The notes under the pieces: generated by a model
Database searches by the model: none
Told to the model about the DNA's origin: nothing
What the model saw: the letters and a program-made list of their open reading frames with translations, nothing else
NCBI RefSeq assembly: GCF_020745735.1
Contig: NC_083428.1
Coordinates: forward strand, 39,866,001-39,930,000
Direction: 5' to 3'
Source: Hemiscyllium ocellatum
Taxonomy: Eukaryota
Length of the DNA stretch: 64,000 bases
Part shown: positions 14,399-55,129 of the stretch, piece after piece
How positions within the stretch are numbered: the stretch's first letter is position 1
Layout of the letters: each line of letters begins with the position of its first letter
Translations under genes and position numbers: made by a program

Positions 14399-14419
14399 CC
14401 AAGAAGAAAATTTTGGGAT

Positions 14420-19146: not shown

Positions 19147-19195
19147 ATGATGTGGATCTTGTGCTTTCTCTGTTCCCTGGCAGTGTGGCTGGGCT
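19147..19195 (+). CDS. IgL cluster 1 leader exon
   Basis: MMWILCFLCSLAVWLG + 1 nt, then GTAAGT donor; the 98-nt intron ends ttttacag and splices in frame to Y-G-Q-C-QTLTQ. Confidence 0.88.
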
Positions 19196-19293
19196 GTAAG
19201 TAAAACACTGCTCCTTCCACAGCAGCAGGTTGGGGTTTTACAGTCACCTTTAAAAGGGTCCATTTCTGATGTTTAATCCTTGCTCTTTTACAG

Positions 19294-19620
19294 ATGGACA
19301 GTGTCAGACTCTGACTCAGCCTGCACAACTGACTGTGAAACCGGGGAACACGGCCACACTGGACTGTAACATTGGAACGGATGATGGCTATTACGTGTTC
19401 TGGTACAAGCAGACACCAGGATCAGCTCCTCAGTGGATCCTCTATTACTATCACTCGCTCAGTGCGCCTACCTATGGGTCTGGGTTTAGCAGCGACCGTT
19501 TCACATCGACAGTCAACAACGGCCACAACATTTACCAGTTAATCATCAAAAACGTGGGTGTGAATGATGCCGCCGTCTATTACTGTGGAAAGTGGTTTAG
19601 CTCGGCCAGTGCTAATGTCT
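19294..19620 (+). CDS. Ig light chain V segment (sigma-like), cluster 1, unrearranged
   Basis: QTLTQP...LDCNIG...FWYKQ...DAAVYYC Ig V hallmarks; long CDR2 YYYHSLSAPTYGSGFSSDRF typical of sigma V; open frame; followed by 12-RSS. Confidence 0.95.
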
Positions 19621-19648
19621 CACAGTGACAGAAGGTAACACAAAAACT
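19621..19648 (+). other. 12-bp-spacer recombination signal sequence of V1
   Basis: CACAGTG + acagaaggtaac (12) + ACAAAAACT. Confidence 0.97.
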
Positions 19649-19954
19649 GATATCAGGAAATAACGTCCTCCTAATATCATTGTATTGGATCAAATACTCT
19701 AATATTTAAGATTTCATAAATAACTTTAATGTTGTCCTTCGGTATAATATTTTCCATTTCCCGTTCTTTCATAATTGGTAACTTTCTGAAATCACTGCCC
19801 ATTACCGAGTGTTGATGACATTTTAATGTCAGTGTGAGGATGTTGTTGTGAGGTTATTCCTTACTGTCCCACACCAACTGGGACACTGGGAATACATGAT
19901 CAATGCTGGCACTGGAGTATCTGAAGGTGTTTTCTTTCCAATTCCAGGATCCTG

Positions 19955-19993
19955 GATAACTGTATGGACTGAACCCTAGAACATCACACTGTG
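19955..19993 (-). other. 23-bp-spacer RSS of J1 with divergent nonamer
   Basis: Plus-strand GATAACTGT + 23 nt + CACTGTG directly before J; heptamer perfect, nonamer 5/9. Confidence 0.8.
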
Positions 19994-20030
19994 TATGTGT
20001 TTGGGCAAGGGACCAAGCTCTTTGTTGCAG
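19994..20030 (+). CDS. Ig light chain J segment, cluster 1
   Basis: YVFGQGTKLFVA + g, FGXG motif, GTAAGT donor at 20031; phase matches the C exon. Confidence 0.96.
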
Positions 20031-20772
20031 GTAAGTGGCTGAGAATTCCCTCTGTGGATACTAACTGTGTGAATTTAGGCACTTGATTGAAATTTAATTA
20101 TTTCCTCATGCCTGTTTCTTAACCTGAGTGAAAATGTTGGTTGTTTCTCCAGAGTCTAGCAGCAGAAGCAGAGCAATCACTCTTGGTGCTGCCTGTCTGA
20201 GTTTGTGCTGTTTCTGACATTGGCTGTTAGTTCATAGTTTTGTACATAATAGTGTTTTTGTTCATAAGTGCTTTGATTTGACCAAATCTTTTTTGCTTTT
20301 TAGCATGCTGTACATTAGTTAATGTATTTGGTGGTGGCACATTTTTGAGAATGTGGTTTAATTTTTTTTTCAAGGCTTTGAAAGTGCAATGTTGGGAACA
20401 GAGTTAAATTTAGTTCTGTTGGTTTTATTTAAAATGTGCAATTGAAAGAAAGAAACTTCATTGATATGTTTTTAATTTTTCATGCCCCAAAACATTTCAT
20501 GGTGAATTAATTAATTGAAGCTTTGTCATTGCTACTCAACTAAAAAGCAATGTGCCTACACAGAACCCATTATTAATTTTGACAAATATCAGAAGCAATC
20601 ATTCTTAGAAACCAAGCATTGCTAATGCAGTACTCAGTAAAATGCCAGTGTAGTTCCTGAGTCAGTATTTCTGTGCTCTGGTCCTCTCTCTCAATTATTA
20701 ATGCCTATTGATAACTTTGTCTGTGCTTTTTTATTTATGCACTGAACTGGAACCTGTTGTTATCTTTACTTC

Positions 20773-26186: not shown

Positions 26187-26509
26187 CTCAGCAACTCCCT
26201 GACCCTTCAGTAAAACTGCTTGGGCCTTCAGATGAGGAGATGTCCAGGAAAGGAGCCGGCACGTTAGTTTGTCTGGTCAGTAAACTGTCCATGGGCTTTG
26301 CTGCGGTCAGCTGGACAGTGGATGGGAGTCCGACGAGCAGTGATGTCCAAACCAGCATGGTGTCCCGTGACCCGGACAACAGCTTCAGTCTCAGCAGCTA
26401 CCTGACCGTCCCTGGCAGTGATTGGAGCAGTGGGAAGGTGTACTCCTGCACAGTGCAACAAGGAACAGCTTCAGGAACGACCGCAACAGTCTCTCAATCC
26501 GGCTGTTAA
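26187..26509 (+). CDS. Ig light chain C exon (sigma-like), cluster 1
   Basis: Acceptor tctcttgcag; (A)QQLPDPSVKLLGPS...TLVCLVS...VSW...SLSSYL...YSCTVQQ...SGC-stop; C1-set Cys/Trp pattern and terminal Cys. Confidence 0.96.
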
Positions 26510-26849
26510 ATATTTGGAAGTTTCATATGTGTTTGCTGTCTAACTTCGGCAGAAAATGTCACTGATCTTCCACCCCTTCACCATTACCCAGCCTCTTCCT
26601 CTGGAGTCTGCTGCATTTTGTGTTCCTGTTTTGCTCTGTGTTTGTGCTGTATTATGTTTGAAGTGTTTGTGCCTGAGGCAGGTTCTGTTCAGTTTCTCAT
26701 TTCAAGTTTCAGTGACCAGTGACTTGGCTCCAGTCAGGAATTTCAGTTCATGTGGGTGCTGTGCTCAACACCCCATGCTGGATTTCATGTGAGTTCATGA
26801 TCAGCCAACAGCATCAGGCGAGTAAGAATTGTTGCTGAGTGTAATGTTC

Positions 26850-26855
26850 AATAAA
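26850..26855 (+). terminator. Polyadenylation signal of cluster 1
   Basis: First AATAAA seen after the C stop, about 340 nt downstream; conserved in copy 2 and followed by GT-rich sequence. Confidence 0.7.
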
Positions 26856-33999: not shown

Positions 34000-34260
34000 C
34001 TGCTGCCTCCTAGTGTCAGGGATCAGGGTTCAGTTCCAACACTGGGAATGTCGGTGTGAAACTTGCATATTTTCCTTGTGTCTGTGTGGGTTTCATTGAT
34101 GCGTTCTGGTTTTCTCTCACAATCCAAAGATGTGCAGGTTAGGTGGATTGGACATGCTAAATTGCTTACAGTGTCCAGGCGATGTGCAGGCCTGGTGGAT
34201 TATCTGTGGCAAACGCAGGGTGATAGGGTTGGGAGAGTGGGTCTTGTTGGATGCTCTTCT
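34000..34260 (+). mobile_element. Shark tRNA-derived SINE
   Basis: gcactgctgcctc...tccaaagatgtgcaggttaggtggattgg core. Confidence 0.7.
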
Positions 34261-35529: not shown

Positions 35530-38500
35530 ATCTTTAATCAGTGATACAAATATCTCTGCTAGGGCCCCTGAATTTTTTTCCCTAGCTTCCCACTATGTCC
35601 TTGGATACACTGGATCAGGCCCAAGGGATTTATCTACCTTTATGCATTTTACGACCTCCAGCATTGCATCCTCTGTAATGTGAATTATTTTCAAGACATT
35701 ACTATCGACTTCCCTGTGTTCCTGATCTTCCATGTCTATCTCACAGGAAATACTGATGTGAAGTACTCATTTAGGATCTCACCGATCTCCTGTATAGATG
35801 GCCTTGTTGGTCTTCAAGGGGCTTTATTATCTCCCTGATTATTCTTATGCTCTTAATATCCATGCTGAATCTCTTCAGACTCTCATTGACCTTATCTGCC
35901 ATGCTGATCTCCCTCTTTAGTGTATGCTTGCCCCGCTATGCTCCACAAAGGATTCTCTTGATCCCAGCTGTCTATCCCTGACAAATGCTTCTTTTGTCTT
36001 GATTAGAACCCCAATCAACTTTTGTAACTTCCTGTCTCATTGCATCAAAATTATCCTTGCCCCAGTTTAGAATTTTAATTTGTTTCTTTTCCATAACAAT
36101 TTTAAAACGAATTGTGTTCAGGTCACTGGGCCCAAAGTGATCCCCCACGAACACCTCAGTCACTTGCCCTTCCTTATTTCCCAAGGGGAGTTCAGGCTTC
36201 ATCCTGTCTCTGGGAGGTCAATCTGCTCACTGATTGACAAGCAACTCTTGAATACACTCACAAAACCCCTCCCCATTCAAGCCCTTATCACTATGACTGT
36301 CCCAATCTATGTTTGGAACGTTAAAATCCACTATTATTACAATTCCTAGATTCTTGCAGCTATGTACGATGTCCCTAAATACTTGCTGCTGTATTTCCTA
36401 CTGACTATGAGTTGGGTTGGGTGGATGTTGGTGGGGTGGAGATGAGGGTAGGGAGGGGGTGTTATAGTCAAGCTCTATCAAAGTGATCATCCCTTTTTAT
36501 TTCTCAGATCCACCCATATAACTTTACTGGACAATCCTTCAAGAATATCCTCCCTGAGCACTGCTGTGATGTTTTTCTTAATTAAAAATGCCAATCCCCC
36601 TCCTCTCTTGCCTACCCTTCTATCCTTCCTGTACCATCTGTATGCCAGGACATTTAGCTGCCAGTCCTGTCCCTCCCTCAGCTGTGATTCTGTAGTAGCT
36701 ATACTCTGCCAGTCCCATGTTCTCCTCTATCCCTGACTTATTGACAGGCTTCTTGCATTTAAGTAAATGCTGTTTAATTCATCAGTCTTCCCTTGTTCTC
36801 TGCCCTGCTCTTGTCTGCCTTGTTTATTTAACTTGCTCTCGTTCACGTCTGTACCAGTCTCCATCTTCTCTCTTGTCTCATTATTGCCTAGGGTCTGCCT
36901 CACCCCTCTCCCCAGACTAGTTTAAACACTCCCATGTAGCTCCAGCAATACATCTCATCCCCCTCCAGTTCAGGTGCAACCTGTCCCTCCGAATAGGTCA
37001 CGTCTGCCCCAGTAGAGATCCCAGTGATCCAAAAATCTGTATCCCTGTCCCCTGCTCCAGCTCCTCAGCCACAGGTACATCTGCCTGATCCTTTTATTCC
37101 TTGCCTCACTAACACGTGACACTGGGACTAATTCAGAGATTCCTACCCTTCAGGTCCTACTTTCTGCAGAACTCCTGATGTTGACTCTGCAGCACCTCAT
37201 CCCTTTTCCTACCTGTGTTGTTGGTACCAATGTGTACAATGACCTCATGCTGCCCTTTGACAATTTTGACCACAGAAATGCCTGTCTGTGTTCCTGATGT
37301 TCACTTTGATTTTGTCAAACCATGCTTTACAGCAAAGTCAGTCATGGTGCGAAATGCAGGCCCAGCCGAATTAATTGATCTTGATAAGACAGTCCCACCA
37401 CCCCCAGTCCCAGCCCAGTCAACCTCCGCTGCACTCTGTCTCAAACAAGTCTTTGCTTTCTTCAATAGAGAGACCAAAACTGTGCTCATATGGTCTTACC
37501 AAGTCCCTGTGTAACTGCAGTACATCAGCCCTACTTCTGAACTCCAATCCTCTTGCAATGAAAGCAAAATCCAATTTGCCAATCTGCTCCCTTGCTGCGC
37601 CTGCCTGTTTACTTTCATTTGGCAAAAGTGGGGACTGCAGATGCTGGAGATTAGAGTCAAGGTTAGAGTGGTGCTGGAAAAGCACAGCAGGTCAGACAGC
37701 ATCCGAGGAACAGGATTCCCGATGAAGGGCTCCTGCCTGAAATGTCGATTTTCCTGCTACTCGGATGCTGCCTGAACTGCTGTGCATTTCCAGAACTGTA
37801 ATTAATCTAAGTAATTTAAGTAACTGTAATCTTGATTGTTTACTTTCATTGACTGGGGTGTGTGGACACCCAGATTTCCCTCTCTGTTCACACTTGCTCG
37901 TATATTACCATTTACATAAATCTCTTCCTTTATGATTTTCACACCAAAGCTTACAACTTCACATTTCTCTCCAAGGTTATACCCCTGCCATGTGTTTCCC
38001 CACTCACTCAAGTTGAGTAAATTACTTTGAAGCCTCCTTGCATCCTCCTTCACAATTCACAATCCTGCTCTCTTTTGAGTTGTCAGCAATTTCGGTAATA
38101 TTGTGGTTGTTTCATTATCCAGGACAATTTTATATATCGCAAATAGCTGGAACGCCAGTACAAATCCTTGCAGTATCCCACCAGTCACTTCCCGACACCC
38201 GGAAAACATTTATTCCCACTCTCTGTTTCTGTCTCTCAACCAATTCCTGATCCATGCTGATATACGATATCTTCTCCCATCTCCTTTCATTTTGCACACT
38301 AGGGATTGTATTAAAAGCTGTCTGATAGTCCAAAGTCACCACATCCACTGGTTCTCCCCTATCTACTCGACTGGAGACATCTTCAAAAAACTCCATCAGC
38401 ATACTTAAGCATGATTTCACTTTCCTAAACCCATGTTGGCCTTGTTCAATCTCACCAATGTTTTACAAATGTTCTTTTATAATCGACTCTCGCATTTTTC

Positions 38501-39598: not shown

Positions 39599-39632
<34 letters not shown>

Positions 39633-39635: not shown

Positions 39636-39639
39636 GAGG

Positions 39640-40259: not shown

Positions 40260-40390
40260 NNNNNNNNNNNNNNNNNNNNNNNNNNNNNNNNNNNNNNNNN
40301 NNNNNNNNNNNNNNNNNNNNNNNNNNNNNNNNNNNNNNNNNNNNNNNNNNNNNNNNNNNNNNNNNNNNNNNNNNNNNNNNNNNNNNNNNN
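40260..40390. other. Assembly gap (131 N)
   Basis: Run of N following a GT/GA-rich low-complexity tract. Confidence 1.
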
Positions 40391-40632
40391 ATCCATCTGT
40401 TTTGTCACCTTCTCAAAGAACTCAATAAGCTTAATGTGGCACGGCTTACCCTTTAATAATCGAGTTGACTACCCCTAATCAAATTATTCCTTTCCAGATG
40501 ATTGTAAATCCAATCTCTTATAACCTTTTCCAACACCTTACCCACAACCAAAGGAAGGCTCAGTGGCCTATAATTACCAGGGTTGGCCTGACTCTCCTCT
40601 TAAACAAGGGATCAACGTTTGCTATCCTCCAG

Positions 40633-42950
40633 GTAAAAACAATGACTGCAGATGCTGGAAACCAGATTCTAGATCAGTGGTGCTGGAAGAGCACAGCAGT
40701 TCAGGTAGCATCCGAGGAGCAGTAAAATCGACGTTTCGGGCAAAAGCCCTTCATCAGGAATACAGGCAGAGAGCCTGAAGGGTGGAGAGATAAGTGAGAG
40801 GAGGGTTGGGGGTGGGGAGAAAGTAGCATAGAGTACAATAGGTGAGTGGGGGAGGGGATGAAGGTGATAAGTTAGGTGCGGGGGAGGGTGGAGTGGATAG
40901 GTGGAAAAGAAGATAGGCAGGTAGGACAAGTCATGGAGACAGTGCTGAGCTGGAAGTTTAGAACTAGGGTGAGGTGGGGGAAGGGGAAATGAGGAAACTG
41001 TTGAAGTCCACATTGATGCCCTGGGGGTTGAAGTGTTCCAAGGCGGAAGATGAGGCGTTCTTCCTCCAGGCGTCTGGTGGTGAGGGAGCAGCGGTGAAGG
41101 AGGCCCAGCTCCTCCATGTCCTCGGCAGAGTGGAAGGCGGAGTTGAAATGTTGGGCCACAGGGCGGTGAGGTTGATTGGTGCGGGTGTCCCGGAGATGTT
41201 CCCTAAAGCGCTCTGCTAGGAGGCGTCCAGTCTCCCCAATGTAGAGGAGACCGCATCTGGAGCAATGGATATAATAAATGATATTGGTGGATGTGCAGGT
41301 AAAACTTTGATGGATGTGGAAGGCTCCTTTAGGGCCTTGGATGGAGGTGAGGGAGGAGGTGTGGGCACAGGTTTTGCAATTCCTGCAGTGGCAGGGGAGG
41401 TGCCAGGATGGGAGGGCGGGTTGTAGGGGGCCATGGACCTGACCAGGTAGACACGGAGGGAACGGTCTTTGCGGAAGGCAGAAAGGGGAGGGTAGGGAAA
41501 TATATCCCTGGTGGTGGGGTCTTTTTGGAGGTGGTGGAAATGTCAACAGATGATTTGGTTTATGCGAAGGGTGGTAGGGTGGAAGGTGAGCACCAGGGAC
41601 GTTCTGTCCTTGTTACAGTTGGAGGGGTGGAGTCTGAGGGCAGAGGTGTGGGATGTGGACAAGATGCATTGGAGGGCATCTTTAACTATGTGGGAAGGGA
41701 AATTACGGTCTCTGAAAAAAGAGACCGTCTCGTGTGTCCTGTGGTGGAACTGGTCCTTCTGGGAGCAGATACGGAGGAGGTGGAGGAATTGGGAATACGG
41801 GATGGCATTTTTGCAAGGGGTAGGGTGGGAAGAGGTGTAATCCAGGTAGCTGTGGGAGTCGTTGGGTTTGTAAAAAATGTCGGTATCAAGTCGGTCGTCA
41901 TTAATGGAGATTGAGAGGTCCAAAAAGGGGAGGGAGGTGTCAGAGATGGTCCAGGTAAATTTAAGATCAGGGTGGAATGTGTTGGTGTAGTTAATGAATT
42001 GCTCAACTTCCTCGCGGGAGCACGTGGTGGCGCCAATGCAGTCATCAATGTAGCGGAGGAAGAGGTGGGGAGTGGTGCCGGTGTAATTACGGAGGATCGA
42101 CTGTTCTACGTAGCCAACAAAAAGACAGGCATAGCTGGGGCCCATACGTGTGCCCATGGCTACCCCTTTGGTCTGGAGTGAGCGGGAGGATTCGAAGGAG
42201 AAATTGTTAAGGGTGAGGACCAGTTTGGCCAAACGAATGAGAGTGTTGGTGGAAGGGTATTGTTGGGGACGTCGGGAGATGAAAGAATGGAGGGCTTGGA
42301 GGCCCTGGTCATGGCGGATGGAGGTGTAGAGGAATGGATATCCATGGTGAAGATGAGACGTTGGGGGCCGAGAAAACGGAGGTCTTGGAGGAGGTGGAGG
42401 GCGTGGGTGGTGTCTCGAACATATGTGGGGAGTTCCTGGACTAGGGGGGATAGGACAGTATCGAGGTAGGTAGGCAGGTAGGTAGGTGGGGCAGGAGCAT
42501 GCTGAGACAATGGGTCGGCCAAGGTGGTCAGGCTTGTGGATCCTGGGAAGGAGGTAGAACCAGGCAGTGCGGGGTTCCCAGACAATGAGGTTGGAAGCTA
42601 TGGGTGGGAGATCTCCTGAGGTGATGAGGTTCTGTATGGTCTGGGAGATGATGGTTTGGTGATCGGGAGTGGGGTCATCGTCGAGGGGGCGGTAGGAAGA
42701 GGTGTCCTCGAGTTGGCATTTGGCTTCAGCGGTGTAGAGGTCAGTGTGCAGGACTACCACTGCGTCCCCTTTATCTGCTGGCTTGATGGTGCGGTCGGGA
42801 TTGGAGCAGAGGGATTGGAGGGCTGTGCATTGTCAGGGTGAGAAGTTGGAGTGCGGATGAGGGGTAGACAGGTTGAGGCGGTTAATGTCCCGGCGGCAGT
42901 TGGAAATGAAGAGGTCGAGGCCAGCGCGGGGTGTCCAGGTTGATGCAGTG
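40633..42950 (-). mobile_element. Penelope-like element (RT + GIY-YIG) inserted into a CR1 LINE
   Basis: 405-aa RT ORF (KGVAMGTRMGPSYACLF, LRYIDD), GIY-YIG NIIYYIHCSRCGLLYIGETGR; 13-bp TSD tg(c/t)tatcctccag (40620-40632 / 42951-42963); hammerhead-like core at about 40727-40758. Confidence 0.93.
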
Positions 42951-43285
42951 TGTTATCCTCCAGTCTTATGGCACTACTCCTGTTGACAATGATGACATCA
43001 AGATCGAAGACAAAGACTCTGCAATCTCCGACCTGACTTCCCAGAGAATCCGAGGATAAATCCCAATTTATCTATTTTCAGATCTTCCAAAATTGCTGAC
43101 ATCTCTTCTTTGTCAACCTTCATCCAATCTAATCTTGTAGTTTGTATCTCCATATTCTTACTAATATTGCCCTTTTCCAATGTGAATACTGACAAAAAGT
43201 ATTCATTAAGCGCTTCTGCAATGTCCTCAGATTCCACACACAACTTTCCACTACTATCTTTGATTGGTCCTAATCTTATTCTTGC
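42951..43285 (-). mobile_element. CR1 LINE fragment (host of the Penelope insertion; continues 40391-40632)
   Basis: RLGPIKDSSGKLCVESEDIAEALNEYF fragment. Confidence 0.8.
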
Positions 43286-43562
43286 CTCACAGTGCCAGGG
43301 TTCCAGGTTCGATTCCAGACTTGGGCGACTATCTGTGTGGAGTTTGCACATTCTCCCCGTGTCTGCGTGGGTTTTGTCCAGTTGTTCCGGTTTCCTCCCA
43401 TAATTCAAAGATGTACAGATCAGGTGAATTAGCCATCCTAAATTGCCTATAGTGCTAGGGGCATGTCAAAAGAAATGGGTCAGGGTGGTTACTCTTCGTA
43501 GGGTCGGTGTTGATAGTTGGGCCGAAGGGCCTGTTTCCACACTGTAGGGAATCTAATCTAAT
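43286..43562 (+). mobile_element. Shark tRNA-derived SINE
   Basis: gcctcacagtgccaggg...ccacactgtagggaatctaatctaatct tail. Confidence 0.8.
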
Positions 43563-44651
43563 CTCTGTTCTTCCTGAAACATCTAAATCCCAGAAGCTGC
43601 AACAACCACTCCAGTCCCTCCTCTGGCCATATCTCTGAAATGGTGACAACATCCAAATCCCAGGTAACAATCCAGGATCACTCTCCTTATTCTGGATTCT
43701 CCTGGCATTGAGCTACACACATGTCAAACCAACATTTTCATTGCCAGTGCCCTCTCGCGACTTGTAAATCTATCCCTGACCTCACTACCCTCAACCTCCT
43801 GCACACCGGACAACCACGGGAGAAGTGTGGGAAATTGGGATTAATGCAGGTTTAGTGGTAGTTATTGTTGGTGCAGGCTCGATGGGCTGAAGGGCCTTTT
43901 CTGTGCTGTTTGACTCTGAGAACTCAAGAATAGTGAATGTGGTCAAGAGGTGGATTAGCCCACGAGAGTCTTCCTAGCTTTCCTAATGGCTGAGAGAATT
44001 CCAGTACTGAAGCTGTGACTGTGTGAGATTTTTGCCTAAAACGTTGATTTTACTTCTCCCTGGATGCTGCCTGAACTGCTGTGCTCTTCCAGCACCACTA
44101 ATCCAGAATCTGGTTTCCAGCATCTGCAGTCACTGTTTTTAACCTGTATGAGGTGGGCCTGGCTGGAAAAGGAAAGGAATTTCAAACATTTTGAGGTTCT
44201 TTAAATCACATCTTTGAGATTCATCTGAAGATTCTGACAGGTGTTTCCCATCTGGTGCACACCAAAGGTTAACCTGGGTGCCAGTGATATACACTGTCTG
44301 ACCTCAGTGGGGTCAGGCTGTCAGGTCAGGGAACAACTCTAACTTCATTAATACAGTGAAAGGCCCGATTTGGAAGATTGTTTATCACTCACTGTTCTTC
44401 CAATTGCTTTTCTTTATGAGCTGTCGTTTTAAATTCGGGTTCCACACACAAACAGTTTGTAGCAAAATGTGTATAACTCAGATTCCAGAATGAAATGTGG
44501 TGAGAGGTGGTGACATTGCATGGAACTGGAATACAGGGACATCCAGAAAGCCTTTGACAAACTATTACACAGGAGATCACAAAGGGGCAGTGGAAAAGGG
44601 TGAAGAATAATGAATTGAATTAAAATGTATTGGAAGAGATAAACAGAGTGA

Positions 44652-44972
44652 GATGAGATTAGATTCCTTACAGTGTGAAAACAGTCCCTTCAGCCCAACA
44701 TGTCCACACTGACCCTCCGAAGAGTAACCTACTCAGACCCATTACCCTCTGACTAATGCACATCACACCATGGGCAATATAGCATGGCCATTTCACCTGA
44801 TCTACACATTTCTTTTGGATTGTGGGAGGATTGTGAGAGCACCCGCAGGAAGCCCGCGGAGACACAGGGGCAATATGCAAGCTCCACAAAGACAGTCGCC
44901 TGAGGCTGGAATCAAACCTGGGTCCCTGGTGCTGTGAGGCAGCAGTGCTAACCATTCAGCTACTGCACCGCA
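44652..44972 (-). mobile_element. Shark SINE (copy 2 only)
   Basis: SINE head and tail motifs; empty site at about 15250-15260 in copy 1. Confidence 0.8.
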
Positions 44973-47867
44973 CTGAGAAGGGGTTAAGAATATTTTGTCA
45001 GACAGGGTTCAAAGTGGAATGTCAGTGTCTGTTCTGGGATCATTTCCAGAACAAAGGTAGAGAAGAAAATCTGAAAATATAACATAATCATTATCTCATA
45101 TTCAGGACATTCTGAAACACTGGCCACTCCAGTTCGCTGCTTGGTGTTTGCTCTCCCAGACCTCCATGTTGGACACCCAGCACCAACACCTCAGGGCACA
45201 CTCCATGGGCACTGGCCACATGCCCCCCACATCCATAGATGTGGCATCAACACCTGCCAGGCTCTCCTCATCATCATGGCACATCTCTGATCCACCAACA
45301 GTTCTGCACTTCAGAGTGTACAGGCAGCTGCCAGGGTAATGCTGCAGCAACCACACTGTGTACGCAGGGACAAAGGGATGGGGTCAGTCCTGGGGTCAAT
45401 AAAATGCAAATCAAGGAGGGTAGAGTGGAACCAGAAGCACTGCTGTGACTGGGAGGTGGAGGGACTCAATGGTGGGGAGGGTCAGCTGCAGCCTGGCTTG
45501 TGGAGAGTACCAAGATGGTGAAGGGGATGGGGATAGTCTTGAAAAGAGCAATGGCAGAGCCAATTGTGCACGTGAGGGCATGGGATACTGCAGGCAGGGG
45601 AGTTACAGACAGTCATCACCACTGTGGCCTCCAGAGGGGAACCGTGCAGCTTGGTAGTAGACATCACTAAACTGTCGTGACTTGGCTTGGGGGGGCATGG
45701 TGGAACATTAAAGTCTCAATTAAATGTGGTGGCTGTCAAAGTGTGGGGATTTAGTAACAACAGGCTGTGCAGGGAGAGCAGGTAAAGGGACAAGTAAGTT
45801 CATGAGTTGGTTGGACCTGTGTTCCAGGCGGAGCCTGAAATCATGGTGTCCAGTCTGACCTGCTTTCCCTTCCACATCTGTCAATCCATGTGAATGATAA
45901 ATGGCTGGGATCACATCCGTGTGGGTGAAGTCCGAGGCAGTTCAATGGGTAAAAGGAGGACTCCATTTCTGTTGGCGTGTGGAGTACAGGTTCACATCAT
46001 TTACCTCACACCATCCCATGTGAAACACATGCAACGTACATGTGTATTGGGTGCAAATACTGGCCATATGCAATGGCCACCATGTTACTGATCCTTGCAA
46101 ATTGCAGACAGACATCTCAATTTTGCAGAAGTGATCACAGCTGACTGTAAAAGAGGCAACTGTGGGTCACAAATATCACAATTGCTGACAAAGTAGCACA
46201 GGTCCCATTCCCCACCCGATCTGGAAGTATTTTGTAAGACTCCTCAATGCAGCATCTGAAGAGGTCACAGCTGTTGGGTCTCTCAGATGCTGTCCAAGAT
46301 ACAGGAGAGCCAGGGGCTTTCATCCTGATGAGTGAGGGTCAGTATTGGTGCAGGTTACACTTTCCCAGGTCACCAGGACAGAACTGCAAGCTCTGGATTG
46401 GCATCTCCAACCTGAAGGCATCTTATCACAGTCCCCTGCAAGGTGACAGTGCTGTTGAAGTTCTATTTGACTGGTCAGCTAGTATTGGACAGGAGGGGCA
46501 CCATAGAGGAGTGGTCAGTCATTAATGAGGCAGGTTTGAACCATAGCACAAGAAAGCTGCTCGGACTCATGAACAGACACAATGAAAACTCGACAAAACT
46601 GACAATGTGACAAATCAGAGTGTAGGATTCATCTATATTCTTTCTTTCCCTTCACATGGAGTTTTTAAATAAGCTGATGCAAAGCTGACCAGGCCATAGA
46701 TTCCGAACAGAACTGGTTCGCCTCCTTAAACAGTGATGTTTCTGTTACTTAAATGGGTGGAAAGGAATCTGAGAGATTTGGGTACGGCTGCAGTAAAATG
46801 ATGTTATATTGAGGTTGACTGTGTTCTGGACAGTCCCTCTGCTTAAAATAACAGGCCCCAGTTCCTGCTGGGGGCCAGGTGTTTGTTCATTTCACCCACT
46901 CGGAGCAGCTGGATTGGACGGCACAAACCACCCGCAACTACTGAAAGCTGATTGGCTGAAACTGACTGCTCAGCAGCTTCATTCAAACTCCTTCAACATT
47001 CCCATGAGGTTCCATTCATTCTCAATGTTCGGGTTCCATGGAAATAACAGATATACTTATTGTCTAAATCATATTCACCATTCTGGGCAATATTGTTAAT
47101 TGTGTAACTGGTCACCTGGTGGTCAATAGCAGGTTAGAGTCTGATAGTTAGGTGGCAAGTAGGTGCATCATTAACTAGTCACATGCTCAGCTCTTTTATG
47201 TTCACACAAACTGTGACAGAGCAAAATTATCCAAACATTAACTGAGGGGATTCACCAACACCTCAGGCTGGATATTCCCCCTGGGGAGGGATACAGGAGT
47301 TGGGAATGTCACTCTGCTCCAATCCCTCTCTTGGAGGCTGGGAACACACACACATTGGGATTCTCACAGAGGGATCCTCTGAACTGGCCTGGAGACAGGG
47401 TCCTCGTGAATTATGGGTGGATGGAGTGTAGCCCCTTCACAGTTGCTCTAATACCCAGGCAGGCAGGAAGGGCCTTTCCTCATTCAAACAGGCCCCTACA
47501 CAAACTGGAAGTTGGAGACTTGCTGGAAGTGACTCATCAATGTCCATTAGTTCAGTGTTAACAAGACCCTAACAGAGTCTAATTGGGCACCTGCCCTACC
47601 CTGCTGGGCCCAGACCCACAATGTCTGAAATAGCTGGAGCTGGGAATGATGTTGGAAACTAAATATTCACTTTCTACCTCCAATCCTGCCTCAAGTTTGG
47701 CTACAAATTAAATAAGGACTATGTATAGCAGACATTCAGGAAGTAGCCTATGCTTAGAAGTTCGCTGTACCAAGTTGCAGATCCATTTTCCTGCAGGAAG
47801 GCATTAGAACATACACATTATGTGATAAAAAAGATTGACAACATGCTGATTTTTAAACGCTCTTCAG

Positions 47868-48417
47868 GATGGTATGTTGGTTAGCACTGCTGCCTCACAG
47901 TGCTAGGGACTTGGGTTCAATTCTAATCTCAGGTGACTGTGTGTGGAAATTGCACATTCTCTCTGTGTTTGTGTGGATTTGTTCCAGTTTCATCCCACAG
48001 TCCAAAGATTACATTACTTACAGTGTGGAAACAGGCCCTTCGGCTCAACAAATCCACACCGACCCACAAACGTGCAGCCCACCCAGACCACGTCGGCAAT
48101 TTAGTGTAGCCTGCACAATTTTGGATTGTGGGAAGAAACCGGAGCAAACCCACACAGACGTGGGGAGAATGTGCAAACTCCACACAGACAGTTGCCTGAG
48201 GCAGGAATTGAACCCAGGTCTCTGGTGCTGTGAGTGCTAACCACTGTGTCAGCGTGCTGCCCATAAAGATGTGTAGGTTAGGTGGATTGGCCATGCTAAA
48301 TTGCCTGTAGTGTTAGGTGGAGTAGTCAGAGGGAAATGGGTCTGGGTGGGTTACACTTTGGAGGATTGGTGTGGACTTGGGTCAAAAGGCCTGTTTCCAC
48401 ACTGTTGGGAATCTCAC
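47868..48417. mobile_element. Nested inverted SINE pair (paralog of 18255-18775)
   Basis: Same structure as in copy 1. Confidence 0.8.
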
Positions 48418-48673
48418 CTATTAACAAGAGCAACAAATAATTTACGCCAGAAAGATATGTTTTGATGGTAGGTGTGAAGAACAATTTTAACTCCAGGGCT
48501 GGTCGGGAGATGCAGTAAACATAAAGGGAAATATCAGACAATAAATGAGCTTCAGTGTAAAATGTGACAGCGATTCCAGTCGCACTGAGGCATCACTGCA
48601 TCAACCTGAATCTCTGAGCCTGAATGGGCGGGTTTCAGATCCTTGCTCTGGTTGGTCAGTGTGAATCGCTCTC

Positions 48674-48713
48674 ATTTGCACGGATTTCCTTCCGGTTGTG
48701 AAGGGCTCTATAA
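48674..48713 (+). promoter_or_regulatory. IgL V2 promoter: ATTTGCAC and TATAA
   Basis: ATTTGCAC at 48674-48681, TATAA at 48709-48713. Confidence 0.7.
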
Positions 48714-48788
48714 CTGGCTTCAATGGGAACCTGCTGCCACAGTCTGTCCCAGATACAGTCGCTGAAGGCAGGCAGCTCATTGACAGAA

Positions 48789-48837
48789 ATGATGTGGATC
48801 TTGTGCTTTCTCTGTTCCCTGGCAGTGTGGCTGGGCT
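48789..48837 (+). CDS. IgL cluster 2 leader exon
   Basis: Identical peptide to leader 1; GTAAGT donor. Confidence 0.88.
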
Positions 48838-48935
48838 GTAAGTAAAACACTGCTCCTTCCACAGCAGCAGATTGGGGTTTTACAGTCACCTTTAAAAGGG
48901 TCCATTTCTGATGTTTAATCCTTGCTCTTTTACAG

Positions 48936-49262
48936 ATGGACAGTGTCAGACTCTGACTCAGCCTGCACAACTGACTGTGAAACCGGGGAACACGGCCACA
49001 CTGGACTGTAACATTGGAACGGATGATAGCTATACCGTGTACTGGTACAAGCAGACACCAGGATCAGCTCCTCAGTGGATCCTCTATTACCATTACTCGC
49101 TCAGTGCGCCTACCTATGGGTCTGGGTTTAGCAGCGACCGTTTCACATCGACAGTCAACAACGGTCACAACATTTACCAGTTAATCATCAAAAACGTGGA
49201 GGTGAATGATGCCGCCGTGTATTACTGTTACAAGTGGGTTAGCTCGGCCAGTGCTTATGTCT
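48936..49262 (+). CDS. Ig light chain V segment (sigma-like), cluster 2, unrearranged
   Basis: Open frame with conserved Cys/Trp; 9 aa differences from V1. Confidence 0.95.
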
Positions 49263-49290
49263 CACAGTGACAGAAGGTAACACAAAAACT
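49263..49290 (+). other. 12-RSS of V2
   Basis: CACAGTG + 12 nt + ACAAAAACT, identical to V1. Confidence 0.97.
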
Positions 49291-49593
49291 GATATCCGGA
49301 AATAATGTCCTCCTAATATCATTGTATTGGATCAAATACTCTAATATTTAAGATTTCATAAATAACTTTAATGTTCTTGGGTATAATATTTTCCATTTCC
49401 CGTTATTTCATAATTGGTAACTTTCTGAAATCACTGCCCATTACCGAGTGTTGATGACATTTTAATGTCAGTGTGTGGATGTTGTTGTGAGGTTATTCCT
49501 TACTGTCCCACACCATCTGGGACACTGGGAATACATGACCAATGCTGGCACTGGAGTATCTGAAGGTGTTTTCTTTCCAATTCCAGGATCCTG

Positions 49594-49630
49594 GATAACT
49601 GTATGGACTGAACCCTAGAACATCAGTGTG
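49594..49630 (-). other. Altered J2 RSS
   Basis: GATAACTGT + 21 nt + CAGTGTG (alternatively + 23 nt + GTGTGTG ending at 49632); 2 nt shorter than J1-RSS. Confidence 0.6.
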
Positions 49631-49667
49631 TGTGTGTTTGGGCAAGGGACCAAGCTCTTTGTTGCAG
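49631..49667 (+). CDS. Ig light chain J segment, cluster 2
   Basis: CVFGQGTKLFVA + g; GTAAGT donor at 49668. Confidence 0.93.
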
Positions 49668-50385
49668 GTAAGTGGCTGAGAATTCCCTCTGTGGATACTA
49701 ACTGTGTGAATTTAGACACTTGATTGAAACTTAATTATTTCCTCATGCCTGTTTCTTAACCTGAGTGAAAATGTTGGTTGTTTCTCCAGAGTCTAGCAGC
49801 AGAAGCAGAGCAATCACTCTTGGTGCTGCCTGTCTGAGTTTGTGCTGTTTCTGACATTGGCTGTTAGTTCATAGTTTCGTATATAATAATGTTCTTGTTC
49901 ATAAGTGCTTTGATTTGACCAAATCTTTTTTGCTTTTTAGCATGCTGTACATTAGTTAATGTATTTGGTGGTGGCACATATTTAAGAATGTTGTCTAATT
50001 TTTTTTCAAGGCTTTGAAAGTGCAATGTTGGGAACAGAGTTAAATTTAGTTCTGTTGGTTTTGTTTAAAATGTGCAATCAAAAGAAAGAAACTTCATTGG
50101 TATGTTTTTTAAAATTTTCATGCCTCAAAGCATTTCTTGGTGAATTAATTAATTGAAGCTTTGTCATTGCTACTCAACTAAAAAGCAATGTGCTTACACA
50201 AAACCCATTATTAATTTTGCCAAATATCAGAAGCAATCATTCTCCGAAACCAAGCATTGCTAATGCAGTACTCAGTAAAATGCCAGTTTAGTTCCTGAGC
50301 CTGGTCCTGTCTCTCATTTTTAATGCCTATTGATAACTTTGTGTTTTTTTATTTTTGCACTGAACTGGAACCTCTTGTTATCTTC

Positions 50386-53300
50386 TGAAATAAGTCTAGC
50401 AGAGGCCAGTATCCTGTCACAGGTGTATTGTATATGACACTGATCCAGTCTCCTCAGAGCCAGCTTATAGTGAACAGAACCTCTGACACTCCTGGTTGGT
50501 TGTTTGGTTATTTATGTATTTATTTTTGGATTCATCCCCACCCCCAAAGAGCCAGCTCTGAATGACCAGGATGTCTTAACACTTTTTTTTTTACATTTTA
50601 TTAAACCATTCACAGTTTATGAAATAATTAACATTAACAGCTGTATACAAAGAAACAGCAATTTTACAAGGGAGAGGAGTGGCAAAGCCAGGTCCCAAAC
50701 CTGACTGTTCAACCAGTTTACAGGGAAGTGAAGAACTTCAAATCCCAGTTTCAAACCTGCCAAGACAGTAATAATGACATTTGTAAGCACTCCAATTTAT
50801 ACCCATCACCCAGTGTCCCCTGATTGGACCAGATTAACAACAGCATAGCTAAGGAAACTCCTATTCTATGAGGGCCACCTAGCTGACCCCATCACGATCA
50901 TTACATCCATCCCCCTCTCTGTCCGGGGACAGAGGCCTGTTTGTTTTCTCATACCATCTGTAGTGGGGGTTTACCCACCAGGTCCGGTTACTCCGACTCA
51001 GCCTCGGATACACAGCCTGACTCTCACACTCGGAGCGTGTTGGAAGAAATTGCTCCTTTTCTTCAGGTGCTTACGGTGCTGAGGCTGCAACATCCACCGT
51101 GTCTGTCTCTGACTCTGACAGATGGCGGGTCGGAGGGGGTGGGGGTGAAGTTACGGGTTCCTGTAGACTTTCCGGCTGATCTTGGGGACCAGGTATTTGA
51201 CCCTGTCACGTTTTGTGAGTTTGCAGCTTTCATCTGGTCCACATGCTTGTTCAGGACCAGCTCACTGACTTGAACTTTGTACATGACAGGACCTGACCTC
51301 TCATCAGCCATGCCTCTTACTCATGCAGGTCCACTTCCATGATATTGGCACCAAACCTTGACTTCTGAAGTAAACTGTGTCTCTCGCCTGGCATAGTCTT
51401 GTGTCCAGTGTTGATGTTCCTGATGCTGTTTCACTTTCCTGCTCCCCCTTCCCCAGGTCCGGGAGGATAAGCTTTAACCTGGTGTGGAGTCTTCTCCCCA
51501 ATAGCAACTCTGTTGGAGCTATTCCTGTAGCTGCCAGAGGGTGGTCAGATAATCAAATAGGAGCCGGGACAGTTTGGTAATGAGTGAAAGGGGAAGCTGT
51601 GTTTTTAAAGTTTGCCTTAAGTTTGGTCTGGCTTTCCACCAGCCCATTGGACAATGGATGGTAAGCAGCTGACCTGGTGTTCAAGACTTGTCTGTGACCA
51701 AGACTTCCAAAAGTCTGTGTATTACAAAAGATGTTTGCTGCTGCTGATGGTAATTTTTATCCCTGTTGGCACTCTGCACACTGACCCACCAACGTGGCTA
51801 TGCCTGCATCCAATCCTGGCCACCAGACATGACCTCTCATCAACATCTTCATCTTGGACTCCCCTGGATGATCCTGGTGGAGTTCAGTCAGGAACTGATA
51901 GTGTCCTTTGCGTGGGACACTCCCTTCCACTCCCCATAATAAAATGCCATCCTCTACAGTGATCTTGGTCTCACCGTGTCCAGGAAAGTATTCATTTCAG
52001 GCTGTGATGGCCCTTCTGATGTTTCCCCCATCGGCGCCAGCTGTTATAGTTTTGCCAGGACGGGATCTTTTTGTGTCCACATTCCGATATTTGTAGCGGT
52101 GGCCGGAAGGGACTCCGGAAAGTTTAAACCCAGAACGGACTTTACCAGTGGCCTCACTACCATTGGTGTATCTGCTGGTGGGAGGCAGCTCAATGCATCC
52201 GCATTTTCTACTTGGCTTCCCGGACGGTGTTCCCACTTGTAACTGTGTGCACTTCGCCTGAGAGCCCAATGCTGAATTCAACCTGAAGTTCTGGGTGGCA
52301 CTGCCTTCTCCTCTTTGAGTAGCCCCACCAGGGGTTAGTGGTCAGTTTCTATGACAATTTTACATGAGCAAAGGTATTGGTGCAACTTCCCCTCAGGAAA
52401 GATAACTGCTCACTTTCCTTCTTTGTCTGGGTGTATTTGTGTTCTGCATTAGCCGCAGTCCAGGAAGCGCACACGATTGGGCATTCCTCTGCTTTGGGCC
52501 TTGTGACCGGTGCAGACCAGTCCATAAACTGTATGGGTTTGATTATTCCTTCGCTTTCCAGCCTCCTGATGTCTGCCTCTACTTTCCTCTGGAAGGACAG
52601 GCCTTGCAGGATCATGGAATCACTTCCTAGTCAACATGCAAGGTGGTCTTTTGCTCCTGTGATAGTCCCGATCCCTTCCTGAAAAGTGCCTGAGAATTTA
52701 ATTAGGACTTTACTCTGGCTCAACATTTATCCATTAGAAAATGGTTGGCTATGAAGGTGAATCTTTTTCAACCAATTTCCCACCATCAAATGAGACCAGA
52801 ACTGGTTTTACCCTTAACCTGAAAAGGTTCCCCGGTATAGGTTCTCAGTCTAGCCGAGGCCATATGCAAAGTTAAGGGTTGGGGTCCAGAATGAAGTTTG
52901 TTCTAGACTGGTTCTGCAGTCACTGATACAGCCACGCTGGTAGCAACCTCCATTAGAACCTGGTGACCATTCAACCAGACACTTATTTTGATTGTGTGAT
53001 TTGGATGTTGCTCCGCAATTTAACTGTTTCAAGACCAATGCAAGTGGGCGTTCTAGGGTGTACACTGTCCTCAACACCAGACTACAGGTTCCTTTACTCA
53101 CTTCAGGCCTAGTGTGTCTCTGTTGCTGTCTCGGTCCTGCACACCGGCAGCATCTACAATGGCTTGCCAGCCCGGATCCTGGAAAACGTCGACCTGTTTG
53201 GCTGAGGCTTGGCTTTGTTTTAGGGTTTTGCTGTGGTTTGACCTAGAGTCCTCCGATTCAGGATATGTCCTGAGTGAGGCGATACTACAGGCTCAGCCTG

Positions 53301-53693
53301 CCTGGGGAGGGGGTCCATTTCCATCAGCATACCCTGTAACTCTTACACTCCACTTGTCACATTTTCTAATGACACAGCCAGTTGTTGTGCCTGTTCGAAG
53401 TCCAGTTGGGCTTCAGCTAGCAGGCACCTTTGCATGGTTACATCATTAGTCCCAGTCTTGTCGCCATTGAAATCACTTCACAGAGGCCTGTATCACTTCA
53501 GCCTTTATTTACAGCTGCATAGTGCGAGACGCTGATCCGGCTTCCTCCGCGCCAGCTCAGAGTGAACAGAACCTCTGACAGTCCTGTTTGTATCTGTCAG
53601 GCAGGACTCTCTCTGATTAGACCGGATTAACAGCCTCAATAAGGGAACTTGTGCTCTGAGATTCACCTGGCTGACTTCGTTTCAATCACTACA
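50386..53693 (-). mobile_element. Ty3/Gypsy element in J-C intron of cluster 2 (paralog of 20773-24461)
   Basis: Same LTRs; retains an extra RT segment RLESEGIIKPIQFMDWSAPV that is deleted in copy 1; right TSD acttc at 53694-53698. Confidence 0.88.
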
Positions 53694-54806
53694 ACTTCCT
53701 GCTTCAACACTTGCTTTTTCCCCCCCTTTGCCATCAGGCGTGACATCTCCAATCCATCCTCAGCTTTTCTCCTTTCCATTTCTGGGGCAGATGAGCAAAC
53801 CAATGTTTGCTGTAAGCCGACTGAAATTCCTAACTTTCTTAGAGCACTGTCTCCTCTCACTCACACGAGGAACTCTATTTCATTCTTCTCACCTCGATCT
53901 CTGAGGAATCTGACGATGACCATAACGATGCTTCTGCTGTGTCTCCCCTTCTCCTTGAGCAGGGAAGCCCCACCTCTCTCATCACAATCTCTTGCTTTAA
54001 TGTGGCTCCTTTTTAATATAGTAGAAAACTGACCCAGAATGTACATAAAGAATCATCAAACAAAATGTTATTTCAGCACCTAATGAAGTATTACATTAAA
54101 GGCCAAATGGATAGAATTTAAGACCTTACACAAACCATTTTTTCTTCATAGGTGATTTGTCAAGCCGTTGGTTTTCACCTCCTCACATTCTCCCAATACA
54201 TGCTGGAACTCTCCCTCCGCTCCCTTTCCTTCATTGTCATCGTTTGCTCTCATTGCTCCTTGGAGACTTGTTGCTTTGATTTAGGTTTTGCACGTTCTGA
54301 GGCTGGAGCTCAGGTTCTGAGGTGAATTCACGGTGATGTAGGAATGTGGAGTAGGTTAACAGGAATATGGTCGGATAGGTCAGAGCTGTAACTCCCAGGT
54401 GTGGTTCTCCTTTACGCTGACTGTCTGTTCCCCTCAAATCCATGAAGCTCAGTGTCACAGCTCATCACAATAGGTTTTCAGGAAGAAAAGGAATTGCTGG
54501 AAAACTCAGCAGATGTGGCAGCATCTGTAGAGAGAAAGCAGAGTTAGTTTTTCAGGTCCAGTGATGTTCTACAGAAAACAGATTTTGAACTTTGAAAGCA
54601 AAGATCAGAGTCAGGGATCACTGAGATCAACTGCAGTGTCCCTGATACATCACCTGGGATGACCCAACATAGCACAGACCTGTGTACAGCCATTGAGTTG
54701 GAAGTGAATTCCCCACAGTGAATGATGCTCTAATCCACAGGACAAACTGAAATGATGCTGTATCCTTTGCTAACTTTGTTTGCAAACATTGTCTTTTCTC
54801 TTGCAG

Positions 54807-55129
54807 CTCAGCAACTCCCTGACCCTTCAGTAAAACTGCTTGGGCCTTCAGATGAGGAGATGTCCAGGAAAGGAGCCGGCACGTTAGTTTGTCTGGTCAG
54901 TAAACTGTCCATGGGCTTTGCTGCGGTCAGCTGGACAGTGGATGGGAGTCCGACGAGCAGTGAGGTCCAAACCAGCGTGGTGTCCCGTGACCCGGACAAC
55001 AGCTTCAGTCTCAGCAGCTACCTGACCGTCCCTGGCGGTGATTGGAGCAGTGGGAAGGTGTACTCCTGCACAGTGCAACAAGGAACAGCTTCAGAAACAA
55101 CCGCAACAGTCTCACAATCCGGCTGTTAA
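54807..55129 (+). CDS. Ig light chain C exon (sigma-like), cluster 2
   Basis: Intact; differs from C1 at D/E, M/V, S/G and G/E. Confidence 0.96.

What the first reader, a model, noticed from the sequence alone, without database searches (positions are those of the whole stretch)
19147..55129. Two intact sigma-type V-J-C clusters about 30 kb apart in the same orientation, permitting inter-cluster V1-to-J2 joining
Seen: V1 (12-RSS) lies upstream of J2 (23-type RSS) in deletional orientation, 30 kb away. Known: cartilaginous-fish Ig clusters are generally described as rearranging within a cluster, whereas closely spaced teleost IgL clusters can recombine between clusters. Inference: V1-J2-C2 products (deleting J1-C1-V2) would add combinatorial diversity. 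They are detectable because C1 and C2 differ at four residues.
Basis: partly seen in the sequence, partly recalled or inferred. Interest (0 to 1): 0.7.

Follow-up and report, generated by a model that had tools for sequence, protein, structure and literature searches.

The report
Two neighbouring shark sigma light-chain genes
Two complete antibody light-chain mini-genes sit about 30 kb apart in the same direction in the epaulette shark genome, so cross-joining between them is geometrically possible, but nothing shows that it happens and it would add almost no new antibody diversity.

Summary
The window is epaulette shark (Hemiscyllium ocellatum). It contains exactly two leader-V / J / C sets, on the + strand, offset by 29,642 bp. 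They lie in a tandem duplication of about 30 kb. All coding parts are open, and both are already RefSeq gene models. By CDR lengths and 85-92% identity to nurse-shark sigma cDNAs they are sigma light chains. C1 and C2 differ at exactly the four residues reported.

There are three caveats:
- "Intact" and "23-type RSS" are too generous for J2. Its signal is either a 6/7 heptamer with a 21-bp spacer or a 4/7 heptamer with a 23-bp spacer. Both J nonamers match only 5/9.
- The N gap is intergenic but lies at the boundary between the two duplicated units, so adjacency rests on scaffolding I cannot see.
- A third sigma cluster on the same scaffold shares three of the four "C2 markers". An earlier scan note also reports an orphan C exon upstream.

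V1-to-J2 deletional joining is allowed by orientation and the 12/23 rule. It competes with a 373-bp join within cluster 1. It would destroy J1, C1 and V2, and its product would differ from V1-J1-C1 by at most five residues, none in CDR1 or CDR2. I found no evidence for or against its occurrence. The verdict is ordinary shark miniclusters with an untested, probably rare, side reaction.

The parts
19032..19039 (+). Octamer-like promoter motif ATTTGCAC, about 115 bp upstream of the cluster 1 start codon
   Evidence: Motif scan; the same motif lies at 48674 before cluster 2.
19147..19195 (+). Cluster 1 leader exon (ATG to GT donor, phase 1)
   Evidence: Sequence read; identical to leader 2; matches residues 1-16 of XP_060702284.
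19294..19620 (+). V1 exon, sigma type, with Cys23, Trp41 and Cys104 present; CDR1 6 aa, CDR2 9 aa
   Evidence: Pfam V-set 2.7e-17; 100% match to the RefSeq model P0033.
19621..19648 (+). V1 12-RSS: CACAGTG, 12-bp spacer, ACAAAAACT
19955..19993 (+). J1 23-RSS: perfect heptamer (19987-19993), 23-bp spacer, weak nonamer matching 5/9 (19955-19963)
19994..20030 (+). J1 coding segment (YVFGQGTKLFVA) followed by a GTAAGT donor
26187..26509 (+). C1 exon, from AG acceptor to TAA stop, with the C-terminal Cys; AATAAA at 26850
   Evidence: Pfam C1-set 5e-18; sequence.
40260..40390 (.). Assembly gap of 131 N, intergenic, at the boundary between duplicated unit 1 and unit 2
48789..48837 (+). Cluster 2 leader exon
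48936..49262 (+). V2 exon; differs from V1 at 9 replacement and 2 silent codons, mostly in the CDRs
   Evidence: matches XP_060702114.
49263..49290 (+). V2 12-RSS, identical to that of V1
49594..49632 (+). Degenerate J2 RSS lying in a (GT)n-like run: a 6/7 heptamer at 49624-49630 with a 21-bp spacer, or a 4/7 heptamer at 49626-49632 with a 23-bp spacer; the nonamer matches 5/9
49631..49667 (+). J2 coding segment (CVFGQGTKLFVA if cut after 49630)
54807..55129 (+). C2 exon; four residue differences from C1
10106..35544 (+). Duplicated unit 1, collinear with 40632-63067
   Evidence: Self-BLAST: about 94-97% identity around V-J-C, falling to 76-88% in the tail.
40632..63067 (+). Duplicated unit 2

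Best explanation
These are two paralogous sigma immunoglobulin light-chain miniclusters of the epaulette shark. They arose by a lineage-specific tandem duplication of a unit of about 30 kb. Each has its own octamer-type promoter, split leader, V with a perfect 12-RSS, one J about 370 bp downstream, and one C exon 5-6 kb further on.

The most likely mode of action (inferred, not shown) is the textbook shark one. RAG joins V to the J of the same cluster by a deletion of about 370 bp, and the VJ exon is then spliced to that cluster's C. The two clusters thus act as independent genes whose V regions have diverged mainly in the CDRs.

A V1-to-J2 deletion of about 30 kb is permitted by orientation and nominally by the 12/23 rule. 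I expect it to be a rare by-product for three reasons. V1 has a better partner signal 373 bp away. The J2 signal is the weakest one present. The product would be nearly the same protein, made at the cost of losing J1, C1 and V2.
For: - Anatomy and open reading frames.
- Exactly two V, two J and two C in the window.
- Pfam V-set and C1-set.
- 100% identity of clusters 1 and 2 to the H. ocellatum RefSeq models XP_060702284 and XP_060702114, with a third model, XP_060702172, on the same 57.1-Mb scaffold.
- 85% (V) and 92% (J-C) identity to a nurse-shark cDNA named sigma. CDR1 of 6 aa and CDR2 of 9 aa fit the sigma rule in PMC5985310.
- Tandem duplication.
- V exon less conserved (95.4%) than its non-coding flanks (97-100%), with 9 replacement against 2 silent codon changes.
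- RSS scores.
- The three H. ocellatum V regions form their own clade (support 96/92).
- RefSeq isoforms of sigma genes in four other species differ only at the V-J junction.
- Reviews state that joining is within clusters. Mouse lambda, a same-polarity two-cluster locus, rarely leapfrogs.
Against: - No rearranged DNA or transcripts of this species could be examined, so joining within clusters is inferred from other sharks and not shown here.
- A distance of 30 kb is small for RAG in other loci, and I found no excess of CTCF-type motifs between the clusters. Nothing in the sequence forbids V1-J2.
- The published argument that distance prevents joining between shark clusters (PMC3014032; 120 to over 200 kb for IgH in PMC5192425) does not apply at this spacing.
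Confidence: 0.75

Rival explanations
1. One reading: V1 joins J2 across the 30 kb at a useful frequency, so the array works as a small translocon and adds combinatorial diversity.
For: Same orientation, a perfect V1 12-RSS, and a J2 signal that can be read with a 23-bp spacer. The spacing is short compared with that reported for shark IgH clusters. No insulator-like motif excess was found.
Against: The J2 signal is the poorest of the four. V1 has J1 only 373 bp away. The product differs from V1-J1-C1 by at most 5 residues outside CDR1 and CDR2. The deletion removes a whole second gene. The mouse lambda analogue rarely leapfrogs. RefSeq isoform sets in other elasmobranchs show junction variants only, never two different V regions on one C (weak evidence).
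Confidence: 0.12
2. Cluster 2 is impaired at its J. The heptamer change leaves J2 poorly cleavable, so V2-J2 joining, and V1-J2 with it, is inefficient. Cluster 2 would then be decaying, or V2 would depend on a J further downstream.
For: At the spacer-23 register the J2 heptamer is CACACAC (4/7). The 6/7 reading needs a 21-bp spacer. The nonamer is 5/9. The read-through in the RefSeq model suggests that J3 keeps the J1-type heptamer, so J2 is the odd one out.
Against: All cluster 2 coding parts, splice sites and the V RSS are intact. V2 shows CDR-focused replacement changes, which suggests it is in use. The first three heptamer bases (CAC), the ones I recall as most critical, are kept. The position of cluster 3 is unknown.
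Confidence: 0.25
3. The adjacency is a scaffolding artefact. The two contigs on either side of the N gap are wrongly joined, ordered or oriented, or the second copy is a retained haplotype.
For: The gap sits within about 240-370 bp of the boundary between the two units, where tandem repeats typically break assemblies. Continuity could not be tested in the window.
Against: Contig 1 runs 4.7 kb past the last unit-1 to unit-2 homology, and there is no contig-end overlap. The copies differ by 3-24% and carry private insertions of 4.2 kb and 3.2 kb, too much for alleles. RefSeq places three distinct sigma genes on this scaffold. The bamboo shark has two sigma models with consecutive accessions on one chromosome.
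Confidence: 0.1
4. V1-C2 transcripts, if found, come from routes other than RAG joining: read-through with splicing of J1 to the downstream C2, AID-driven recombination between the 95%-identical J-C introns, or chimeric PCR or assembly products.
For: Atlantic stingray RefSeq isoforms XP_059847629 and XP_059847630 share an identical L-V-J but carry two different C domains with 19 differences. V regions expressed with the C of another cluster are reported for shark IgH (PMC4279169). The J segments and the first 51 C codons are identical between the clusters, which invites chimeras.
Against: The stingray isoforms are automatic models of unknown support. Switching of this kind has not, to my knowledge, been reported for shark light chains.
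Confidence: 0.3

Closest known systems
Nurse-shark and horn-shark sigma (type IV) light-chain genes (named GenBank cDNAs ABO64184-88; Criscitiello and Flajnik 2007 as cited in PMC5985310)
   Same: 85% V and 92% J-C identity to the nurse-shark chain, 75% in the leader-V part to the horn-shark chain. Short CDR1, long CDR2, J motif VFGQGTKLFVA and a C-terminal Cys.
   Different: A different species. Here the germline layout is visible: three clusters on one scaffold, plus an orphan C reported by an earlier scan note. RefSeq calls them 'lambda-1 light chain-like'.
Cartilaginous-fish minicluster organisation (one V, one J, one C; joining within the cluster)
   Same: Single V, J and C in one orientation, with V-J about 370 bp and J-C 5-6 kb. 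This fits the 250-500 bp quoted in PMC5192425.
   Different: The neighbouring cluster starts only 22 kb after C1, much closer than the 120 to over 200 kb quoted for IgH clusters. An earlier scan note reports similar spacing (about 28 kb) for kappa in this genome.
Mouse Ig-lambda locus, two clusters in the same polarity
   Same: Same-orientation clusters in which a join between them deletes the intervening V, J and C.
   Different: In the mouse such leapfrogging is described as extremely rare (PMC3014032). Mouse clusters have several J-C pairs and lie much further apart (the spacing is from my own knowledge).
Zebrafish IgL rearrangement between clusters (PMC3014032)
   Same: Closely linked V-J-C clusters, with a 12-RSS on V and a 23-RSS on J.
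   Different: The zebrafish joins are inversional because the V segments face the other way, so intervening segments are kept for editing. Here only deletion is possible and nothing is kept.
Shark IgH switching between clusters (Zhu et al. 2012, as summarised in PMC4279169)
   Same: It produces the V of one cluster with the C of another.
   Different: It is AID-dependent, acts after V(D)J joining, and is described for heavy chains. It is not RAG joining.

Membership tests
Immunoglobulin light chain, sigma isotype | One V-set domain plus one C1-set domain, with a C-terminal Cys for the bond to the heavy chain | tested here: met
   Pfam V-set 2.7e-17 and 7.4e-17, C1-set 5e-18 and 2.9e-17. Both C exons end in ...SGC before the stop.
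Immunoglobulin light chain, sigma isotype | Longest CDR2 of the isotypes (9-10 residues); sigma-2 has CDR1 of 8 and CDR2 of 7 (PMC5985310) | tested here: met
   By my own IMGT-style delimitation of the translated V exons, CDR1 is 6 aa and CDR2 is 9 aa.
Immunoglobulin light chain, sigma isotype | Closest named relatives are sigma chains | tested here: met
   Among elasmobranch hits, the only ones with a curated isotype name are 'immunoglobulin sigma light chain' of nurse shark and horn shark, with 79-86% overall identity. I did not run a tree against kappa, lambda or sigma-2.
Immunoglobulin light chain, sigma isotype | Kappa-like signal polarity: 12-RSS on V, 23-RSS on J | tested here: inconclusive
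   The V signals are clean 12-RSS. J1 has a perfect heptamer and a 23-bp spacer but a 5/9 nonamer. J2 is ambiguous between 21- and 23-bp spacers.
Cartilaginous-fish minicluster (autonomously rearranging V-J-C cassette) | [quoted passage not shown] | tested here: met
   The cluster spans are 7,363 and 6,341 bp.
Cartilaginous-fish minicluster (autonomously rearranging V-J-C cassette) | Rearrangement confined to the cluster | not testable with these tools
   No rearranged DNA or transcripts of this species were available.
Loci with V-J joining between clusters (zebrafish IgL, mouse lambda leapfrogging) | Compatible signals in an orientation that yields a chromosomal coding joint | tested here: met
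   V1's 12-RSS is upstream and J2's signal downstream, both on the + strand. The weakness of J2 applies here too.
Loci with V-J joining between clusters (zebrafish IgL, mouse lambda leapfrogging) | Documented VJ-C products that combine segments of two clusters | not testable with these tools
   None of the three RefSeq models is a hybrid. No transcript-derived proteins were found.

The most novel reading that the evidence does not exclude
Shark light-chain miniclusters spaced only 20-30 kb apart in one orientation undergo RAG-mediated deletional joining between clusters at a measurable rate (here V1 to J2, or V2 to a downstream J when J2 fails). The sigma array would then behave as a nascent translocon, and the 'strictly within cluster' rule would be a consequence of distance rather than of cluster autonomy.
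Probability: 0.12. Interest if true: 0.6.

Novelty: new member of a known kind. Interest (0 to 1): 0.3.

Why it matters
If the two clusters rearrange only within themselves, this is a routine example of shark antibody gene organisation, and it is already present in RefSeq as gene models under a misleading 'lambda-1-like' name.

Its value is as a clean test bed. Two neighbours in the same orientation lie 30 kb apart, with distinguishable V regions, and three of the four RSSs are good. The published explanation for the lack of joining between shark clusters is distance, and that does not hold at this spacing. A repertoire experiment here could therefore show whether cluster autonomy is enforced by something other than distance. 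The pay-off for antibody diversity itself would be small.

Tried and rejected
- Fetching DNA and coordinates for the third sigma cluster and for cluster 1 with the look-up of encoding contigs returned no DNA and no coordinates because the file is too large. The order and spacing of cluster 3 remain unknown.
- Searching the protein collection for transcript-derived epaulette-shark sigma chains found only the three RefSeq models, so a V1-C2 product could not be tested.
- A scan for a germline signal-joint footprint (back-to-back heptamers) found only two 2-mismatch hits, in 4 of 100 shuffles matched. They are paralogous sites inside the J-C introns. Rejected.
- A scan for CTCF-type motifs between the clusters found one hit, at chance level.
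- Rfam found nothing in the window.
- I tested continuity across the gap by looking for a paralogous junction upstream of unit 1. Only LINE-tail family matches appeared, none collinear across the junction.
- The key shark IgL papers (Hsu 2016; Iacoangeli 2017; Criscitiello and Flajnik 2007; Matz 2021) are not held. Statements about them rest on reviews that cite them.
- The false-duplication (haplotype) reading was rejected on divergence and private insertions.
- The bacterial promoter scan is irrelevant to a vertebrate gene.
Full report
**What is there.**
An ORF list and an RSS scan followed by direct reading show two complete light-chain gene sets on the + strand.

| Part | Cluster 1 | Cluster 2 |
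|---|---|---|
| Leader exon | 19147-19195 | 48789-48837 |
| V exon | 19294-19620 | 48936-49262 |
| V signal | 19621-19648 | 49263-49290 |
| J coding | 19994-20030 | about 49631-49667 |
| C exon | 26187-26509 | 54807-55129 |

- The cluster 1 leader ends in a GTAAGT donor. J1 encodes YVFGQGTKLFVA and is also followed by GTAAGT.
- Each V signal is CACAGTG, 12 bp, then ACAAAAACT.
- C1 runs from an AG acceptor to a TAA stop, with AATAAA at 26850.
- An octamer-like ATTTGCAC lies about 115 bp before each start codon.
- tblastn with V, J and C finds exactly two of each in the 64 kb.
- The two V signals are the only sites of that quality on either strand, so this is far beyond chance.

**Whose genes and which isotype.**
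- Pfam gives V-set and C1-set.
- The in-silico spliced products match H. ocellatum RefSeq models. Cluster 1 is XP_060702284 and cluster 2 is XP_060702114. A third model, XP_060702172, has a different V and a C carrying E, V, S, E. All three are on one 57.1-Mb scaffold of GCA_020745735.1.
- These models read through the J heptamer, so they look like germline-based predictions rather than rearranged transcripts.
- The closest relatives with a curated name are nurse-shark and horn-shark 'immunoglobulin sigma light chain' cDNAs, at 85% (V) and 92% (J-C) identity for nurse shark.
- CDR1 of 6 aa and CDR2 of 9 aa match the sigma pattern and not the sigma-2 pattern given in PMC5985310.
- The RefSeq name 'lambda-1 light chain-like' is therefore misleading.

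**The duplication.**
- Self-BLAST shows collinear homology from 10106/40632 to 35544/63067.
- Ungapped identity by segment:

| Segment | Identity |
|---|---|
| 2.3-kb 5' flank | 97.0% |
| Leader | 100% |
| Leader intron | 99% |
| V signal | 100% |
| V-J spacer | 97.7% |
| J-C intron | 95.1% |
| C exon | 98.1% |
| Just downstream of C | 88.5% |
| Tail | 76-84% |

- The V exon (95.4%) is less conserved than its non-coding flanks. It has 9 replacement and 2 silent codon changes, at codons 31, 33, 35 (CDR1), 52, 53 (CDR2), 88, and 98, 101, 107 (CDR3).
- Each unit has a private insertion. Unit 1 carries a truncated gammaretrovirus-like fragment at 10739-14983 (integrase C-terminus and env TM). Unit 2 carries a Penelope-like element at 40932-44144 (RT plus GIY-YIG).
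- The three H. ocellatum V regions form their own clade (support 96/92), as do those of the brownbanded bamboo shark. The duplications are therefore lineage-specific, or the copies are being homogenised.
- Many elasmobranchs carry several sigma models on one chromosome, so a sigma array is normal.

**The gap.**
- The 131 N at 40260-40390 lie 13,751 bp after the C1 stop and 8,399 bp before leader 2. No exon is near, so reading frame is irrelevant. The ORFs that cross the gap are runs of X.
- The left flank is GT-rich low-complexity sequence behind a LINE tail. The right flank is unremarkable.
- The gap lies about 240 bp before the first unit-2 homology, at the unit boundary, where tandem repeats tend to break assemblies.
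- I looked for a paralogous junction upstream of unit 1 that would show whether the flanks are collinear. Only repeat-family matches turned up. There is no contig-end overlap either.
- Continuity is therefore untested and rests on scaffolding evidence I cannot see. I did not attempt to fill the gap.
- A haplotype artefact is unlikely, given 3-24% divergence and the private insertions.

**The recombination signals.**
- The J1 signal is a perfect heptamer, a 23-bp spacer and a nonamer ACAGTTATC (5/9, with only one of the central A positions kept).
- J2 lies in a (GT)n-like run. It is either CACACTG (6/7) with a 21-bp spacer or CACACAC (4/7) with a 23-bp spacer, with the same 5/9 nonamer.
- A 5/9 nonamer at a fixed position is expected in about 5% of random sequence (my own binomial estimate). 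The '23-type' label therefore rests mainly on the J1 spacer and on the 12/23 rule.
- The J3 read-through in the RefSeq model is of the J1 type, so J2 is the deviant. 'Two intact clusters' is true for coding sequence but generous for J2.

**How it most likely works.**
- The following intervals were measured here:

| Join | Interval lost |
|---|---|
| V1-J1 | 373 bp |
| V2-J2 | 368 bp |
| V1-J2 | 30,010 bp |

- Inferred from reviews: shark V(D)J joining occurs 'exclusively' or 'almost exclusively' within a cluster (PMC5192425, PMC4279169, PMC12227049).
- One author group attributes this to distance and polarity (PMC3014032). Distance is not a strong barrier here.
- Three points still argue that V1-J2 is at most a rare by-product:
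  1. V1 has a better signal 373 bp away, and J2 has V2's perfect signal 368 bp away.
  2. J2 is the weakest signal of the four.
  3. With one V and one J per cluster, a V1-J2 join is not a second chance. It needs both clusters unrearranged, and it deletes J1, C1 and V2, so two independent tries on that chromosome become one.
- The product would differ from V1-J1-C1 only at the first J codon (Tyr/Cys), which sits at the joining end of J, and at four C residues. That is no real gain in binding-site diversity.
- The closest analogue is mouse lambda, where leapfrogging between same-polarity clusters is described as extremely rare.

**Evidence sought on whether it happens.**
- No transcript-derived sigma proteins of this species are in the protein collection.
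- None of the three RefSeq models is a hybrid.
- RefSeq isoform sets of sigma genes in small-spotted catshark, starry smooth-hound, thorny skate and whitespotted bamboo shark differ only at the V-J junction. That is what junctional variants formed within a cluster would look like. This is weak evidence.
- One set is different. Atlantic stingray XP_059847629 and XP_059847630 share an identical leader-V-J but carry two C domains that differ at 19 positions. If real, this points to splicing to an alternative downstream C.
- That observation, the reported switching between clusters in shark IgH, and the identity of J and of the first 51 C codons between the two clusters mean that 'V1 CDRs with C2 markers' would not prove a V1-J2 DNA join.
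- The third cluster shares three of the four C2 markers.
- I found no signal-joint footprint, no CTCF-motif excess and no Rfam hit.

**Verdict.**
- These are ordinary shark sigma miniclusters that are already annotated. The spacing does make them a convenient place to test the within-cluster rule.

Noticed in passing
window 19294-19620 vs 48936-49262: The V exon is more diverged (95.4%) than its non-coding flanks (97-100%). It has 9 replacement against 2 silent codon changes, concentrated in CDR1, CDR2 and CDR3. This pattern suggests diversifying selection on top of homogenised flanks.
   Followed up: partly
window 10739-14983: An insertion private to unit 1. Its ORFs hit the MLV-type integrase C-terminus and the retroviral env TM domain. 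It is a truncated endogenous gammaretrovirus-like fragment, absent from unit 2.
   Followed up: partly
window 40932-44144 (minus strand): An insertion private to unit 2. ORFs at 41543-42760 and 40872-41546 hit reverse transcriptase and GIY-YIG nuclease, the domain pair of Penelope-like elements. Short inverted repeats of about 80 bp flank it (40644-40761, 44033-44131), and a related copy lies at 37633-37796.
   Followed up: partly
outside the window: Hypanus sabinus XP_059847629 / XP_059847630 (P0132, P0043): Two RefSeq isoforms of one stingray sigma gene share an identical leader-V-J but carry different C domains (19 residue differences). This may be splicing of one VJ to two alternative C exons of neighbouring clusters, or a modelling artefact.
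   Followed up: no
same scaffold, not in window: XP_060702172 (P0067): A third epaulette-shark sigma cluster with its own V, a J1-type J read-through and a C carrying E, V, S, E. Its gene span is 7,524 bp. Its position relative to this window is unknown.
   Followed up: partly
window 19943-19956 and 49582-49595: A 14-bp perfect palindrome (TCCAGGATCCTGGA) abuts the weak J nonamer, overlapping its first two bases, in both clusters. Its meaning is unknown.
   Followed up: no
window 26187-26509 vs relatives: C2 and C3 keep the residues seen in bamboo sharks (E, V, E at three of the four marker positions). C1 carries the derived D, M, G, so C1 is the faster-changing copy.
   Followed up: partly
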